Source: Blepharisma stoltei ATCC 30299 (Eukaryota > Protista > Ciliophora). From it: a stretch of 64,000 nucleotides of DNA. Of the stretch, positions 44,523-64,000 are shown one piece after another. Position 1 is the stretch's first letter. Each line of letters begins with the position of its first letter. The stretch lies in contig CBFDEM010000002.1 in the NCBI GenBank assembly GCA_965603825.1, forward strand, positions 784,677 through 848,676, in the 5' to 3' direction. The notes under the pieces were generated by a model, which saw nothing but the letters and a program-made list of their open reading frames with translations, searched no databases and was not told where the DNA came from. Made by a program: the position numbers and the translations under genes.

Positions 44523-46079
44523 ATGAAAAAAGCCCTTGGCTTAGCTTTTTTATTACCTTCTATAGGAGCTGGATATTATCTATTTTCCAAAAGAACTCTT
44601 CCAGAGCCTACTGGAAAACCATATCAGGAGCTTCCAAAAGCTTCTTATGAAGACCACCCCAATAAGCATATAATCTCGAAAATCCCCAAAACAATCGGAA
44701 TTATCGGTGCCGGTATGAGCGGCCTTATAAGCGCCAAAACCTTTAGAACTCAAGGCTATGAAGTAGAAGTTATCGAAAAACGTCCAGGACCTGGAGGAGT
44801 CTGATACGAAAATTTTGATAATTCTGGCTTGCAAGGTACAAAAGATACTTATTTTTTGCCAGACTACCCTTTTCCAGATAATTACCCACCATTTCCAAGG
44901 CGTCAACAAATAAAGGACTGAATTGATGGGTTAGTTAAAAAATTCGATTTATCGCCATTAATAAAGTTCAATACAGAGGTAAAATCAGTTACACAAAATC
45001 CAGATGAAACTTGAAAATTAACATTTAAGGATGGGACGTCAAAAAATTATGATTTTCTGGTGGTTTGTTCGGGATTTAATGATATTCCAAAAATTCCTCA
45101 ATATAAAGGTCAGGAAAATTTTAAAGGAAAGATTTTACATAGCAGTGAATTTATTAATGCAAAAGTACATTGCCAAGGCAAAAAAGTTATTGTTATAGGA
45201 GCTGGAAAAAGTGCATTTGATATTATGTCAACTTCAGTTGACTATGGTGGTGAGGTGCTCGGGCTTGTAAGGAAAATCGGGTATGCATATCCAGTTAACC
45301 CAAAACCATATGGAATCCCATTTGAATTTACGACATATTCAAGGCTTGCATATCTCTGTGGAATCATATATGACCCAGAAAGCAGTTTTATTCATAAATA
45401 TTTCGGCTTCATTGAATATTTATGACTAAAATTTGTCCATCTCCAATTAAGATATGGAATAATCAAAGAGCTTGAGCCTGATGAAAAAGATTTGCACTTC
45501 TTAGAAACTGCTGGAATAAGAGATCCGCCAGTCCAAAAGAAAATTGCTGATGGGAAAATCAAACTTATGAGGGGAGAAATCGAGGAAATCAAAGAAAATG
45601 GAATAATGGTAAAAGGGAAACTTATAGAGTGTGACACCATTGTATTTGCAACAGGCTTCAAGCCAAATTATTATGTAAAACAAAAAGAAAACGACGGGTT
45701 TTGGCTATATAGAGATGTATTAGTCCCTGGAGTAAGGAATGTAGCAATTGTAGGAGCTTTTATAACAACTTACACAAATTTATGAAGTAATATACAAGCT
45801 TTATGGCTCGTCGATATTCTAAGAGGGAGTTTCAAGGTTGCTTCTATAGAAGAAATGAATAAGGACATTGACAAGAAAAAGAAAATCATGTTTAAATACT
45901 ACGAGAACTATAAAGGCGACCCAATTTATATCAGTTCTCAGCCGTTTTCACCATTTATTATTGATGAATATCTAAATGATCTCAAAATTCAAACCGTTAG
46001 AGACGATACAATGTATAAGCATTGGTTCAAAGCTTTTGATATCAATAACTATAAAACAGTCGTCACGCATCATATTTAA
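44523..46079 (+). CDS. Flavin-containing monooxygenase with N-terminal membrane anchor
   Basis: GAGMSG (FAD), GGV[TGA=W], FKGKILHSSEF (FMO motif), GAGKSA (NADPH), FATGF; four ORF-track pieces share one frame. Confidence 0.92.
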
Positions 46080-46122
46080 TTAGCAAGTTACCATAATAAT
46101 TGTGATTATATTAAATTAATTT

Positions 46123-48246
46123 TTAATTTTTTTGACTTGCAATGTAGTCTAAATAATCCATTTCACTCTGAGAAAGTGATTGCTTACAGCTAGGGCAGAT
46201 AGTAAGTGGCTTCTTTACTTTGGAAGCAAATTTTGATATGCAGTTCCAGCAAATATTCTTTTTGCATTTGGAAGAATGTTCAAAATATAATTCTTCAGTG
46301 ATAATATTTGTACAATTTATGCACCAAGGCAAATACGAATCAATATTTATGGATTGAGAGACATTCTGAGAAGGGTTTGAGTAAGGATTTTTTGTATTTT
46401 CTAAGGGTGTTAGTGGAGGAGGCTTTGAGTAAAAGCTTGGGATTTGTAGGGATTGTGATGGAAGCTCATATCTAGCTGGCTGAGGTGGAAGATTTTGATA
46501 TGTGCTTTTCGAATTTTCCATAGGTATAAATGAAGGCTGCGGGTTAAGGTTTGGCCTTTGAGGGGCTTGAGAATGAAATTCATAAGAAACTGGCTGATAG
46601 GATGAGTTTGACACTTTTTGGCTTTGATTTTGATATGTTGGAACAGACGAATTGAATGGAACCTGTGATTGATTTAGGACTTGAGCTTGTGAATTAAAAG
46701 CAGGAACTTGAGAATTCATATTTGGTAAGAATGGTCTTGGGATAACATTCACAATTTCATCTCCTTTTTGGAGATTTATCGGATTTATCGGTTTATTTAC
46801 AGCATAAAAATTAGACTGAGGATTATCTAATCTGGGCTGAGGATTTATTGGATTTATCTGATTGTTTACAGCATAAAGATTAGACTGAGGGTTATCTAAT
46901 CTGGGCGGCTGAGGATTTATTGGATTTATCTGATTGTTTCCAGCATAAAAATTAGGCAGAGGATTATCAAATTTTGATGGCTGAGGAGCGATTGGATTCT
47001 CCTGAATACTTCCAGCATAGATGTCAGGCCTAGAATTCTCTGCTTTAAATGCCTGGTTGACATTATATGTATAAAATTTTGGTAGCTTATTTCTATCGAT
47101 TTGGTTTTCTTCAGCCTGCAATGGGGCATCATACTCGTTTTTAGAAGGGAAGAAATTTGGCTTATTTATGTTTTCTTGAGGTGGAATCTTTAATTTCACC
47201 TCAGATTTCCTTAGAGGCTGGGCTTGAATATTATCATTAGGGCCAGAATCATTATATCTGGATTTCGTAGGTATTTGTAAGCTATCGTTAGGGAGATTTA
47301 CAGATGATGGACTGCTGAAGTCAGGGAATTGAATGCTATCATTAGGAAGCTTAAAAGATGCAGGATTTCCAAATTGATTTGTCGTTTTTTTGCTATCTTC
47401 TTTTTGGGCTGGCAACTTTGGAAAATTTAATGTGGTTTGTGCTAAGTGATCTGGAACTTGTGTCACATTTACTGCTGCTTCTTTATTAGGCTCTTTTTTC
47501 CCAATTATTTCAGCTTGCTCAATGTTTATAGCGACTTTTTCATTTGCCTCTTTATCAGTTTTTCTCACAGTTACATTTGGTATCTCAATATCCATATCAT
47601 CAGGGTGTTTAGGCTCCTTTGGGGTAATTTTTATAGAATCCTGATTTTTGGATTCTTCAATCCCTTCTAGGGTATCAGACTTGCTTTTCTTTTTCTCCTC
47701 TTCTAATTTTCATCTGCTTTCTTTTTCATTTTTCTTTTCTTCGTCAAATTTCCCTTTATTTTTATTTTCTTTCACTTTAGCATTACTCTTTTCTTCTTCG
47801 GCTTGGCTATCAAGCTTGGCTATTTCTTTTGCCAAAAGGATGCGATTCTTTTTCAATTCCTCAGACCAGTGGCCAAGTAGCTCTAAAACCAAAATCATTA
47901 AATCAATGGCTCTATAAATTTCAAAGAGGTCTAAGGGCTGCTGGTGCGCCCATTCGTTTCTATAGGCTTTGATGGCCTTTATAAAAGTTATATGAGATTT
48001 TTTCCCGAACTTGTTTTCATTGAATTTCATGGCTTTCGACCATAAAAGAGTCAGCAGCTGAGTCAAGTCTCAAGTCTTTAAGTCATTCATTTTAGATTTC
48101 TCAAAGCCTTTAGGACGTGCATCATAAACTTCGTTGCAATTCATTCATTTTGGTCCATGCAACTCCTCAAAGTCAATGCTAATAATTTCAGCTAATTTGT
48201 CCCGAAAAGCTATAAGGGAGTCTTGAAAAATTTGCTCCTTAGACAT
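46123..48246 (-). CDS. Swt1-like HEPN domain, coiled coil, N/P/Q-rich region and C-terminal RING-like Zn finger (~707 aa)
   Basis: ATG 48246; HGPK[W], T[W]DLTQLL and YRNEWAHQ..EIYRAIDL; joins 46123-47595 through TGA 47710; tail CINC..HSSKC..CWNC..CPSC. Confidence 0.8.
46785..47000 (-). repeat. Intragenic imperfect tandem repeats (NNQINPINPQPxLDNPQSNxYA)
   Basis: Three to four related units, visible in both DNA and protein; boundaries are approximate. Confidence 0.8.
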
Positions 48247-48520
48247 TTTCTTTAAAATATATGCAGAATTTAATTTGGGAATTAGCTTTAGGATAAAGCA
48301 TCAAAAAAATATTTATAAGTATAAATCTACTTTTTTCCTATTGAGAAAAATATTATGATTATTAAAGCTCTATTGTATTTTAATTATTCTTCAACAAAAA
48401 TATAATTCTTTTGTTAGATTCTAAGAACAGCCCTCAATATTTAAATTTCCCAAGAGAATTATTTTCATCTCCATTGGCATATTTCTTTTAAAGATATTCA
48501 TCAACTATTACTTCAAAATA

Positions 48521-49828
48521 ATGGAAACTTCATTTAAGTTAAATCCTATCAAAGCATATTCAAGCCTAAAGACTCCTCAATCAAAAGCCTCCCAGCAGCC
48601 CCCTCACGTTGATTCTGAGATTCCTCAACTCTTAGCATTAATTCAAAGTGAATCTTATGAATTAATAATTTCTAAAGATTTTGAAAACGCAATCCCAAAG
48701 CTGAAAAAACTCGAACAAATATTAGAAGCTTTAATAATCCAAGGAACCAATAGTGATTCTGACCTTATTTTAGCTACTATTCATAATATTGCTCTATGCT
48801 ACCAGAGAATAGGAGATTTAGAGAAATGTATTGCTTATCTTGAAGGGTGCCTTTTCAATGTAAACAAGTTTGGAGCGATGAATTCTTGTAATACCCTTAT
48901 GGAAGGAGAATTAAAACGGAATCTTTATAAAATAAAACTGTATGTACAGTCCTGCGCCGTTCTATCACAGCTAGAAAAACATAAAAAAGCTTTAGACAAT
49001 GCCAAAAACGCTTTGAAATTAAGTTTAACCGCAATACGCCTCACCATTCAAGCCTGCAAGGCTCAGCTAAAAAAATACAAAGCCTTAAAGCAGCGAAATT
49101 CTTTAATTACTGATGATTTAAGAAAAAGTTATAAGGTCATCTACATGTCCTATCCTGCCATTAAAGCTTTACGAAAATATTTACTGACAGGTTCTTTAAA
49201 TCACCATCAAAAAATTCGGTCAGTTTTAGGTATAAAAGACGACCCCGACTGGTTAAAAACCTTAACGATCTCTGACATTATGTTTATGCAGCCTTACACT
49301 ACTGAAGATCTCAAGCAATCTTTAGGTCTCCAAGTAGAGTTTACTAACGATTATTTATTATATAAAATTTGCTTATTAGCTGTCAGTCATTTTTGTATAT
49401 CGACTGAGCTCCGTTATATGAGCGCTTACGATGATGCTAAAAAGGCTCACAAAAAATCAGTAGAAATTCTTGAGTATTTCATTCCAGACGTGTCACCATT
49501 AAGAATTCATATAGAAGAATGCTATAAGAAAAGGTTTGGGGAAGATGAAATCATGCTAAATCAGACTGCTGATAATATTCATACGAAAAAAAGAAACTCC
49601 TCGATGCTGCCAAGTATAATAGAAAGACCCGAATCCTTATCACCGAGATTGGCAGAAAATAAAAATAAACATTTTAATGCAACTTTGAGACCTCATAGTG
49701 TACTAAGCAAAGGGAAAGTGACTGCTGAAAAAAGGAAAAACGCGACTATGAAATTAAGCGAATTAAAAAGAAAAAACAGCAATGAAGAAATAAAGCTTAA
49801 TATTTCAGCAAGGTTGGATTGAGGATAA
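48521..49828 (+). CDS. TPR-containing protein
   Basis: TIHNIALCYQRIGDLEKCIAYL and CAVLSQLEKHKKAL; ends TGA GGA TAA. Confidence 0.75.
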
Positions 49829-62775: not shown

Positions 62776-64000
62776 TGTTAGGGTGTTAGGGTGTTAGGGT
62801 GTTAGGGTGTTAGGGTGTTAGGGTGTTAGGGTGTTAGGGTGTTAGGGTGTTAGGGTGTTAGGGTGTTAGGGTGTTAGGGTGTTAGGGTGTTAGGGTGTTA
62901 GGGTGTTAGGGTGTTAGGGTGTTAGGGTGTTAGGGTGTTAGGGTGTTAGGGTGTTAGGGTGTTAGGGTGTTAGGGTGTTAGGGTGTTAGGGTGTTAGGGT
63001 GTTAGGGTGTTAGGGTGTTAGGGTGTTAGGGTGTTAGGGTGTTAGGGTGTTAGGGTGTTAGGGTGTTAGGGTGTTAGGGTGTTAGGGTGTTAGGGTGTTA
63101 GGGTGTTAGGGTGTTAGGGTGTTAGGGTGTTAGGGTGTTAGGGTGTTAGGGTGTTAGGGTGTTAGGGTGTTAGGGTGTTAGGGTGTTAGGGTGTTAGGGT
63201 GTTAGGGTTAGGGTGTTAGGGTGTTAGGGTGTTAGGGTGTTAGGGTGTTAGGGTGTTAGGGTGTTAGGGTGTTAGGGTGTTAGGGTGTTAGGGTGTTAGG
63301 GTGTTAGGGTGTTAGGGGTTAGGGTGTTAGGGTGTTAGGGTGTTAGGGTGTTAGGGTGTTAGGGTGTTAGGGTGTTAGGGTGTTAGGGTGTTAGGGTGTT
63401 AGGGTGTTAGGGTGTTAGGGTGTTAGGGTGTTAGGGTGTTAGGGTGTTAGGGTGTTAGGGTGTTAGGGTGTTAGGGTGTTAGGGTGTTAGGGTGTTAGGG
63501 TGTTAGGGTGTTAGGGTGTTAGGGTGTTAGGGTGTTAGGGTGTTAGGGTGTTAGGTGTTAGGGTGTTAGGGTGTTAGGGTGTTAGGGTGTTAGGGTGTTA
63601 GGGTGTTAGGGTGTTAGGGTGTTAGGGTGTTAGGGTGTTAGGGTGTTAGGGTGTTAGGGTGTTAGGGTGTTAGGGTGTTAGGGTGTTAGGGTGTTAGGGT
63701 GTTAGGGTGTTAGGGTGTTAGGGTGTTAGGGTGTTAGGGTGTTAGGGTGTTAGGGTGTTAGGGTGTTAGGGTGTTAGGGTGTTAGGGTGTTAGGGTGTTA
63801 GGGTGTTAGGGTGTTAGGGTGTTAGGGTGTTAGGGTGTTAGGGTGTTAGGGTGTTAGGGTGTTAGGGTGTTAGGGTGTTAGGGTGTTAGGGTGTTAGGGT
63901 GTTAGGGTGTTAGGGTGTTAGGGTGTTAGGGTGTTAGGGTGTTAGGGTGTTAGGGTGTTAGGGTGTTAGGGTGTTAGGGTGTTAGGGTGTTAGGGTGTTA
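62776..64000 (+). repeat. Telomere, (TGTTAGGG)n = (CCCTAACA)n
   Basis: About 1225 bp of an 8-mer, with the G-rich strand running 5'->3' toward the window end; the same unit as heterotrich telomeres. Confidence 0.98.

What the first reader, a model, noticed from the sequence alone, without database searches (positions are those of the whole stretch)
46123..48246. Hidden Swt1-like HEPN RNase / disordered repeat region / RING-like finger protein
Seen: with UGA=Trp, two unremarkable ORFs and an upstream stretch join into one ~707-aa protein. It begins MSKEQIFQDSLIAFRDKLAEIISIDFEELHGPKW..LKTWDLTQLLTLLWSKAMKF..IKAIKAYRNEWAHQQPLDLFEIYRAIDLMILVLELLG. Known: R-x4-H is the HEPN RNase active site. The pattern G-x2-W, WD-x2-LL, RNxWAHQ, YRAxD resembles the Swt1-like HEPN subfamily, common in prokaryotic conflict systems. 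Seen: ~400 aa of N/P/Q-rich low-complexity repeats and a terminal Cys-rich RING-like finger follow. Inference: an endoribonuclease coupled to a condensate-forming region and a ubiquitin ligase, possibly for RNA surveillance, antiviral defence or small-RNA-guided genome editing. I do not recognise this architecture, and standard-code annotation would split it.
Basis: partly seen in the sequence, partly recalled or inferred. Interest (0 to 1): 0.82.

Follow-up and report, generated by a model that had tools for sequence, protein, structure and literature searches.

The report
Ciliate HEPN RNase–RING finger fusion gene
This is a real, transcribed 707-residue Blepharisma gene that joins a bacterial-type Swt1-like HEPN ribonuclease domain, a very long low-complexity linker and a RING finger; the gene is already in public annotation, but this domain combination, shared by a small group of ciliate proteins, was not found described in the papers searched.

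Summary
On the minus strand, 46123-48246 is one 707-codon frame with three in-frame TGA and no TAA/TAG. The window is Blepharisma stoltei macronuclear DNA, where UGA codes Trp. Two of the TGA codons fall on Trp columns conserved in homologues.

Residues 1-125 match Pfam HEPN_Swt1 above its cut-off (44.6 bits, E 2e-11) and keep RNEWAHQ. The model's best structural match is the yeast Swt1 C-terminal domain (Z 9.2). The tail is an eight-ligand cross-brace finger. It misses every Pfam RING cut-off, but its family profile and model match only RING domains.

"Hidden" is wrong. The identical 707-aa protein is already public, and a paralogue is named "Swt1-like HEPN domain-containing protein".

All three HEPN_Swt1 genes of this genome, a Stentor coeruleus protein and about ten unnamed eukaryote-like sequences share the HEPN-RING build. 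Most have a short linker; this copy has about 480 extra residues.

The scan had already noted both paralogues on other DNA of this genome.

RNase activity, E3 activity, condensate formation and any role in genome editing are untested. Roquin and DZIP3 are known HEPN+RING proteins from other HEPN families.

I rate it a new variant of a known kind, of moderate interest.

The parts
46123..48246 (-). Whole coding sequence: 707 codons plus a TAA stop, no intron
   Evidence: frame and stops. (identical public protein P0001). (contigs tile 46105-48236 with no joints).
47872..48246 (-). Swt1-like HEPN domain, residues 1-125
   Evidence: Pfam PF18731 at 44.6 bits against a 27.5 cut-off, E 2.1e-11, profile positions 5-112 of 115. 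AlphaFold model with pLDDT 89.9, all helical. Best VIA match is 4pqz_A, the yeast Swt1 C-terminal domain, at Z 9.2, followed by many HEPN domains.
47944..47961 (-). RNEWAH (R96-x4-H101), the HEPN catalytic motif
   Evidence: Read directly from the sequence. H101 and Q102 are invariant, and R96, N97, W99 and A100 are at least 90% conserved across 37 homologues.
48145..48147 (-). In-frame TGA, codon 34, read as Trp
   Evidence: This column is Trp in at least 90% of homologues, including standard-code ones. P0001 has W here.
48070..48072 (-). In-frame TGA, codon 59, read as Trp (the W of the WD motif)
   Evidence: Most homologues have WD at this position. P0001 has W.
47710..47712 (-). In-frame TGA, codon 179, read as Trp, inside the K/E-rich stretch
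   Evidence: Contigs of three of the four runs span it (X1 record 5 at 46910-47864, X2 record 13 at 46910-48216, X4 record 26 at 46910-47841); in X3 two contigs abut there. The frame continues for 528 codons to a finger that the paralogues conserve.
47542..47871 (-). K/E-rich charged stretch, residues 126-235
   Evidence: K 22% and E 18%. Residues 129-139 are helical in the model.
46327..47541 (-). P/N/Q/S-rich low-complexity linker, residues 236-640
   Evidence: Composition. No Pfam family matches at E<=1. Other family members have only about 55-160 residues between the Rx4H motif and the finger, against 539 here.
46773..46998 (-). 72-bp tandem repeat of 3.2 copies, giving 24-residue units that each carry an N-[FL]-Y-A motif
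   Evidence: 85% matches, score 308; NFYA, NLYA and NFYA at residues 432, 456 and 479.
46177..46326 (-). RING-type finger, residues 641-690. Ligands are C642, C645, H657, C661, C666, C669, C684 and C687.
   Evidence: Six Cys are invariant across 15 family tails. The family profile matches RNF4, RNF125, TRIM21, BRCA1 and RING2 chains at E 1e-8 to 1e-5. Foldseek and VIA matches are essentially all RING or RING-like cross-brace fingers. Pfam RING models stay below cut-off.
46126..46176 (-). C-terminal helix after the finger, residues 691-707
   Evidence: Model helix at 69-82 of the 83-residue tail.

Best explanation
Shown: window 46123-48246 (minus strand) is one intron-less gene of Blepharisma stoltei, covered end to end by contigs of public runs that look like RNA-seq. 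Its 707-residue product has four parts:
- an N-terminal Swt1-like HEPN domain of the bacterial, catalytic-motif-bearing kind (RNEWAHQ intact);
- a K/E-rich helical stretch;
- about 400 residues of P/N/Q/S-rich low-complexity sequence, partly built from 24-residue repeats;
- a C-terminal eight-ligand RING finger followed by a helix.

It is the long-linker member of a small eukaryotic family, which includes three Blepharisma paralogues and a Stentor protein, in which HEPN_Swt1 is always followed by this RING.

Inferred: like other HEPN domains with Rx4H, the domain pairs with a second copy to form a metal-independent RNA-cleaving site. The RING either recruits an E2~ubiquitin to mark proteins that sit on the bound RNA, or holds two chains together. 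The protein would then couple RNA recognition or cleavage to ubiquitination, in RNA quality control or defence against foreign RNA. The expanded linker is a lineage-specific insertion and may add multivalent, low-affinity contacts.
For: One gene:
- The frame statistics are far beyond chance.
- The identical public protein exists.
- Two TGA codons lie on conserved Trp columns.
- UGA=Trp and the CCCTAACA telomere are published for B. stoltei (PMC9942806).
- Contigs cover 46105-48236 with no joints and none lie in the flanking spacer 48237-48527.

HEPN:
- Pfam match over the cut-off.
- Fold Z 9.2 to yeast Swt1, then Csm6, AbiA, AbiF, sacsin and MNT-HEPN.
- Conserved R, N, H and Q.

RING:
- Ligand pattern.
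- Profile matches to solved RING E3s.
- Fold matches.
- Conserved C-P-x-C in most members.
- An aromatic residue four positions after the sixth ligand, and K/R/N after the last ligand in many members. From general knowledge these are E2-contact positions.

Family:
- All three PF18731 loci of the genome share the build.
- So does a Stentor coeruleus protein, OMJ81891.1.
- An exhaustive profile search found only 33 hits among 1.8 billion representatives. The eukaryote-like ones form one group apart from the bacteria-like ones.
Against: - No activity was measured for either domain.
- The finger fails every Pfam RING cut-off for this protein (best 17 bits).
- The hydrophobic residue before the second ligand is not conserved in the family.
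- Some RING folds, such as IRF2BP2 and Slx1, which are among the best structural matches, are binding modules rather than ligases.
- HEPN domains in Roquin and yeast Swt1 bind RNA without cutting it.
- The four runs are only guessed to be RNA.
- Contigs give neither strand nor expression level.
- No dimer was modelled.
Confidence: 0.6

Rival explanations
1. RNA-binding E3 ligase. The HEPN domain only binds or senses RNA, as in Roquin or yeast Swt1, and the RING does the chemistry. The protein would ubiquitinate partners of particular RNAs without cutting them.
For: Roquin has a RING packed on a non-catalytic HEPN domain and is an active E3 (PMC4614863). The Roquin N-terminus appears among the fold matches at Z 6.1. 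Yeast Swt1 HEPN is inferred to be inactive (PMC3710099).
Against: Unlike those cases, R, N, H and Q of RNxWAHQ are kept across the whole family and in its bacterial relatives. Anantharaman et al. take that pattern as the mark of active versions.
Confidence: 0.2
2. RNase with a structural finger. The RING fold serves only to dimerise or dock the protein and has no ligase activity. The HEPN RNase is the sole effector.
For: The best VIA matches include non-ligase RINGs (IRF2BP2, Slx1) and dimeric RINGs with flanking helices (Rad18, RING1B/BMI1 and BRCA1). The model has a helix after the finger. HEPN RNases need dimers (general knowledge).
Against: C-P-x-C, the helix aromatic and a basic or polar residue after the last ligand are common in the family. 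Profile matches are to bona fide E3 RINGs.
Confidence: 0.15
3. Two or three separate genes, or a decaying gene. The TGA codons would be real stops, and the 118-aa and 490-aa ORFs would be independent products or remnants.
For: With the standard code the frame is split.
Against: UGA=Trp is established for this species. TGA codons 34 and 59 lie on conserved Trp columns. Both paralogues also carry in-frame TGA and show the same N-to-C domain order. A contig spans all three TGA positions. There is no TAA/TAG in 707 codons.
Confidence: 0.02

Closest known systems
Catalytically active Swt1-like HEPN domains of bacteria and a few eukaryotes (Ava_2192 group; Naegleria, dictyostelids, Daphnia) in Anantharaman et al. 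2013, PMC3710099
   Same: Same Pfam family (PF18731). The RNxWAHQ motif is kept. The nearest non-ciliate relatives in the exhaustive search are bacteria-like proteins.
   Different: The paper lists the eukaryotic copies as solos and the bacterial ones as fused to AAA+ ATPases or sited in R-M operons. Here the domain is fused to a RING. The bacteria-like relatives found here carry TM helices and a small zinc ribbon instead.
Yeast/animal SWT1 (PIN endonuclease plus C-terminal HEPN)
   Same: Best structural match of the model is 4pqz_A, the yeast Swt1 C-terminal domain: Z 9.2, rmsd 3.1, 121 residues aligned.
   Different: No PIN domain (no Pfam PIN hit at E<=1). The HEPN domain is N-terminal and single. 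The catalytic motif is present, whereas the SWT1 HEPN is described as probably inactive. Canonical SWT1 proteins were not recognised among the 33 profile hits. It is not an SWT1 orthologue.
Roquin (RC3H1/RC3H2)
   Same: RING plus HEPN in one RNA-directed protein with long low-complexity regions. Its RING is an active E3 and touches the HEPN domain (PMC4614863).
   Different: The domain order is reversed (RING first). The Roquin HEPN is split around a ROQ domain, lacks Rx4H and is followed by a CCCH finger. None of these features is found here.
DZIP3 / hRUL138
   Same: An animal family listed as HEPN fused to RING, among other domains (PMC3710099 Table 1).
   Different: It belongs to a different HEPN family; no DZIP3-type HEPN Pfam hit was listed for this protein. 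It is confined to the animal lineage and has other accessory domains.
C4C4 RING of CNOT4 and other RING E3s
   Same: Eight ligands in cross-brace spacing. Most family members are all-Cys (C-x2-C-x11-C-x2-C-x4-C-x2-C-x11-C-x2-C). NOT4 (1e4u) is among the profile matches.
   Different: The window's copy has His as its third ligand. Pfam RING models score below cut-off. No E2 partner is known.

Membership tests
HEPN superfamily | Rx4-6H motif at the start of a helix | tested here: met
   R96-N-E-W-A-H101. R is at least 90% conserved and H invariant in 37 homologues.
HEPN superfamily | Compact all-alpha bundle fold | tested here: met
   The model (pLDDT 89.9) is all helices. VIA matches to Swt1, Csm6, AbiA, AbiF, AF_0298, sacsin and MNT-HEPN at Z 5-9. 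Foldseek alone found nothing.
Pfam HEPN_Swt1 (PF18731) | Score above the curated gathering cut-off of 27.5 bits | tested here: met
   44.6 bits for residues 1-140 and 40.6 for the whole protein. The paralogues score 36.6 and 23.8 on truncated pieces and 51-52 bits read through.
HEPN RNase (function) | Metal-independent RNA cleavage by a dimer | not testable with these tools
   No assay or multimer model was available.
SWT1 orthologue | N-terminal PIN endonuclease domain with C-terminal HEPN | tested here: not met
   No PIN family at E<=1 in P0001. The HEPN domain is at the N-terminus.
RING finger | Eight Zn ligands in cross-brace spacing | tested here: met
   C-x2-C-x11-H-x3-C-x4-C-x2-C-x14-C-x2-C. 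Six Cys are invariant in 15 tails.
RING finger | Pfam RING model over its gathering cut-off | tested here: not met
   The best scores are IBR at 17.2 bits (cut-off 24.3) and zf-RING_2 at 14.4 (cut-off 27.3). The C47 paralogue reaches 24.1 on zf-RING_10 (cut-off 31).
RING finger | Profile and fold similarity to solved RING domains | tested here: met
   The family profile matches RNF4 at 1.1e-8, RNF125 at 3.6e-7 and TRIM21 at 5e-7. Foldseek probability reaches 0.96-0.98 against RINGs. VIA Z reaches 6.6, all matches RING-type.
RING E3 ligase (function) | E2 binding and ubiquitin transfer | not testable with these tools
   Only indirect evidence: C-P-x-C, an aromatic four positions after ligand 6, and Lys after ligand 8 in this protein.
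Roquin family | ROQ domain and CCCH finger | tested here: not met
   No such Pfam hits.

The most novel reading that the evidence does not exclude
Heterotrich ciliates, and some unnamed protists, carry a family in which a bacterial-type, catalytically competent HEPN RNase is hard-wired to a functional RING E3. RNA recognition or cleavage would then directly trigger ubiquitination, as a eukaryotic RNA-triggered immune or quality-control effector. The window's paralogue would have gained a prion-like linker that concentrates it in granules.
Probability: 0.2. Interest if true: 0.65.

Novelty: new variant of a known kind. Interest (0 to 1): 0.45.

Why it matters
HEPN RNases are central effectors of prokaryotic defence, for example in Cas13, Csm6, Abi systems and toxin-antitoxin pairs. 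Their eukaryotic descendants are mostly either housekeeping or inactive.

A conserved eukaryotic family that keeps the catalytic motif and adds a RING would be a simple test case for how a bacterial RNA-cutting module was wired into the ubiquitin system. RNAi by feeding is established in Stentor (general knowledge, not checked here), and Stentor has a short 219-residue orthologue, so the idea could be tested directly.

For annotation, the result shows that the RING in this family is missed by Pfam thresholds. Databases therefore list these proteins only as HEPN proteins.

Tried and rejected
- Foldseek of the HEPN model against PDB gave only noise (best E 0.98, globins). The exhaustive VIA search was needed.
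- The HEPN family profile found no solved relative by sequence (best E 0.32).
- PADLOC defence models gave nothing for the HEPN domain.
- The supplement of the genome paper holds no mention of HEPN, Swt1 or PF18731, so no published expression value for this gene was found.
- Paper searches for HEPN with ciliates, or for 'Swt1-like', returned only Anantharaman et al. 2013 as relevant.
- treekit.build was killed by the sandbox. A plain FastTree run, midpoint rooted with no support values printed, replaced it. It is only a rough guide.
- I could not name the organisms behind the metagenomic family members. GC content, stop codon use and telomere-like words in L004-L008 were uninformative.
- Pfam found nothing in the two short ORFs just upstream (45492-46076). 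The downstream 433-aa ORF shows only sub-threshold TPR matches.
- An intron search found one 16-nt GTA..AG string in the CDS. It is not a multiple of three, no contig skips it, and the public model has no intron, so I rejected it.
- Whole-protein searches used the stored public protein P0001.
- Read laying was given 3201 letters.

Full report
**Where the window comes from**

The window ends in about 150 copies of TGTTAGGG, running from 62776 to 64000. This is a permutation of the CCCTAACA telomere repeat reported for Blepharisma stoltei (PMC9942806).

The window's assembly has 41.46 Mb in 64 contigs. That matches the published 41-Mb, 64-contig macronuclear genome. One paralogue of the gene studied here is CAG9318712.1 of B. 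stoltei.

The same paper states that this species reads UGA as tryptophan and has tiny introns of 15-16 bp.

On the minus strand, 46123-48246 is a single frame of 707 sense codons.
- It has TGA at codons 34, 59 and 179 and a terminal TAA.
- From base composition, a frame this long without TAA/TAG has a probability of about 1e-17.
- None of 2000 shuffles lacked TAA/TAG, and the other five frames carry 15-43 of them.

A public protein of 707 residues (P0001; NCBI, UniRef) is identical to the frame read with Trp at each TGA. It already carries a precomputed PF18731 hit. So the gene is not hidden from current annotation.

Codon 34 falls on a column that is Trp in at least 90% of 37 homologues. Codon 59 is the W of a WD pair present in most of them, including bacteria-like sequences that use the standard code. 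This supports UGA=Trp within this very gene.

**Transcript evidence**

Four public runs from one study hold the stretch. Their type is only guessed to be RNA.
- Their contigs tile 46105-48236. None lie in the spacer 48237-48527, and they resume at 48528, where the next gene starts.
- They show no joints, insertions or deletions. Coverage confined to gene bodies fits RNA rather than DNA.
- X2 record 13 (46910-48216) crosses all three TGA codons. X1 record 5 and X4 record 26 cross 47710.
- The only contig breaks inside the gene that recur in all four runs are at the 72-bp repeats (46838-46939). There the pieces overlap by 27-30 bases, as expected of assembly at repeats.
- Contigs cannot show strand or expression level, so expression during conjugation was not assessed.

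**The N-terminal domain**

Searched as pieces between the TGA codons, the third piece alone already passes the Pfam HEPN_Swt1 cut-off (30.3 bits). Residues 1-140 of P0001 score 44.6 bits (E 2.1e-11, cut-off 27.5) over profile positions 5-112 of 115.

An AlphaFold model built on 37 homologues has mean pLDDT 89.9 and is all helical. Foldseek found nothing. An exhaustive VIA-align search of 48,161 chains ranks the yeast Swt1 C-terminal domain first (4pqz_A: Z 9.2, rmsd 3.1 Å, 121 residues). It is the only chain with Z of 8 or more.

Next come a Cas nuclease, Csm6, AbiA, AbiF, AF_0298, Roquin, sacsin, HepS and MNT-HEPN at Z 5-7.5. The tool warns that helical bundles often reach such scores. Here, though, the top match is the family predicted by sequence, and the list is dominated by HEPN domains.

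RNEWAHQ (R96-Q102) is kept. H101 and Q102 are invariant, and W34, D60, R96, N97, W99, A100, R112 and D115 are at least 90% conserved.

There is no PIN domain, so this is not an orthologue of SWT1.

**The tail**

Residues 642-687 read C-x2-C-x11-H-x3-C-x4-C-x2-C-x14-C-x2-C. For this protein every Pfam RING-like model stays under its cut-off (best: IBR 17.2, zf-RING_2 14.4). On that test alone membership fails.

Three other results support a RING:
- A profile of 15 family tails matches solved RING E3 chains almost exclusively: RNF4 at 1.1e-8, RNF125 at 3.6e-7, TRIM21 at 5e-7, then BRCA1, RING2, COP1, RBBP6 and NOT4.
- The model (pLDDT 80.9) matches Rad18, TRIM37, RING1B, COP1 and TRIM69 RINGs by Foldseek, with probability up to 0.98.
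- By VIA-align it matches PHF7, IRF2BP2, HOIP RING1, Slx1 and RNF213 at Z 5-6.6.

I therefore call it a divergent RING-type cross-brace finger.

Several features suit an E2-binding RING, judged from general knowledge of RING-E2 contacts rather than from any test here. C-P-x-C at the last ligand pair is conserved in most members. Many members have an aromatic four residues after the sixth ligand, and many have K, R or N after the last ligand (K688 here). The hydrophobic residue before the second ligand is not conserved.

**The middle**

Residues 126-235 are K/E-rich (22% and 18%). Residues 236-640 are P 15%, N 14%, Q 10% and S 10%, with aromatic residues scattered through them. A 72-bp unit repeated 3.2 times (46773-46998, 85% matches) encodes 24-residue units that each carry N-[FL]-Y-A. 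No Pfam family matches this region.

The distance from the Rx4H motif to the finger is 52-57 residues in most family members. It is 69-101 in a few, 156 in the contig-21 paralogue, and 539 here. This copy has therefore acquired about 480 extra residues. That these form condensates is a guess.

**The family**

The genome has exactly three PF18731 loci: this one, one on contig 47 (272 aa, one TGA) and one on contig 21 (325 aa, two TGA). All three have the HEPN-linker-RING build. First readers of this scan had noted HEPN-RING fusions of 819 and 978 letters elsewhere in this genome. Those lengths equal the two paralogues.

A profile search of 1.84 billion representative proteins found only 33 hits at E<=1e-3.
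- The best ones are 209-252-residue proteins with the same build.
- One cluster contains Stentor coeruleus OMJ81891.1, named by UniProt 'Swt1-like HEPN domain-containing protein'.
- The others come from unnamed metagenome, Logan and MMETSP records on gene-dense, eukaryote-like contigs. I could not name their organisms.
- The remaining hits look bacterial and often carry TM helices and a small CPxC...CPYC ribbon.

In a rough FastTree (midpoint root, no support values shown), the eukaryote-like sequences form one group apart from the bacteria-like ones. The window's protein pairs with the contig-47 paralogue, and the contig-21 paralogue sits nearer the Stentor group.

**Comparison with what is known**

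Anantharaman et al. 2013 describe catalytically active Swt1-family HEPN domains in Naegleria, dictyostelids and Daphnia. They describe these as closer to bacterial versions than to SWT1, and as solos. They predict these act as defensive endoRNases (PMC3710099). The ciliate family fits that description except that it is fused to a RING.

HEPN plus RING is known in DZIP3/hRUL138 (same paper, Table 1) and in Roquin, whose RING packs on a non-catalytic HEPN domain and is an active E3 (PMC4614863). Both involve other HEPN families and other layouts. Full-text searches found no paper describing an Swt1-like HEPN fused to a RING, or any HEPN protein of ciliates.

**Mechanism**

Shown: the gene, its reading, its coverage by contigs that look like RNA-seq, the two domain assignments, the conserved catalytic motif and the conserved fusion.

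Inferred: HEPN dimerisation and RNA cleavage, RING-E2 engagement or RING-mediated pairing, and a role in RNA surveillance or defence.

The main rivals keep the architecture but switch off one of the two activities. Nothing here links the gene to small-RNA-guided genome editing.

**Verdict**

Its claim of a hidden gene is wrong, and its functional ideas remain hypotheses. The finding is a new variant of a known kind: a known RNase domain family in a domain combination not found described in the papers searched, conserved in a small ciliate-centred family. The window's copy stands out for its linker expansion.

Noticed in passing
window 62776-64000: A telomere array of about 150 TGTTAGGG units closes the window. 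The gene studied lies about 14.5 kb from it.
   Followed up: partly
P0017, P0020, P0028, P0029, P0031 (no window coordinates): Bacteria-like relatives of the HEPN domain share a different build: HEPN_Swt1, then two predicted TM helices, then a C-terminal ECPxC...CPYC zinc ribbon. These may be membrane-anchored HEPN proteins. No neighbourhood was examined.
   Followed up: no
P0044-P0046 (no window coordinates): Proteins of about 388 residues combine HEPN_Swt1 with RNase III and a dsRNA-binding domain, according to precomputed Pfam hits. P0045 has SKTWAH where the family has RNxWAH, so its HEPN may be inactive.
   Followed up: no
L008 677-1105 and 1290-2048; L007 1337-2095: In an unnamed eukaryote-like contig, a HEPN-RING gene of the RNRVMHQ subgroup is preceded by a 142-aa gene with a weak HEPN_Swt1 hit. 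This may be a tandem duplicate without the finger.
   Followed up: no
window 48521-49822 (+): The neighbouring 433-aa ORF has only sub-threshold TPR matches. Contigs of the same runs start at 48528-48541, seven bases or more inside its predicted start.
   Followed up: partly
P0011 (no window coordinates): This is a 331-aa HEPN_Swt1 protein with an extremely Asn-rich tail and no finger, from an unnamed ENA contig. It groups with the window's protein and the contig-47 paralogue in the rough tree. It may be a solo from an AT-rich protist.
   Followed up: no
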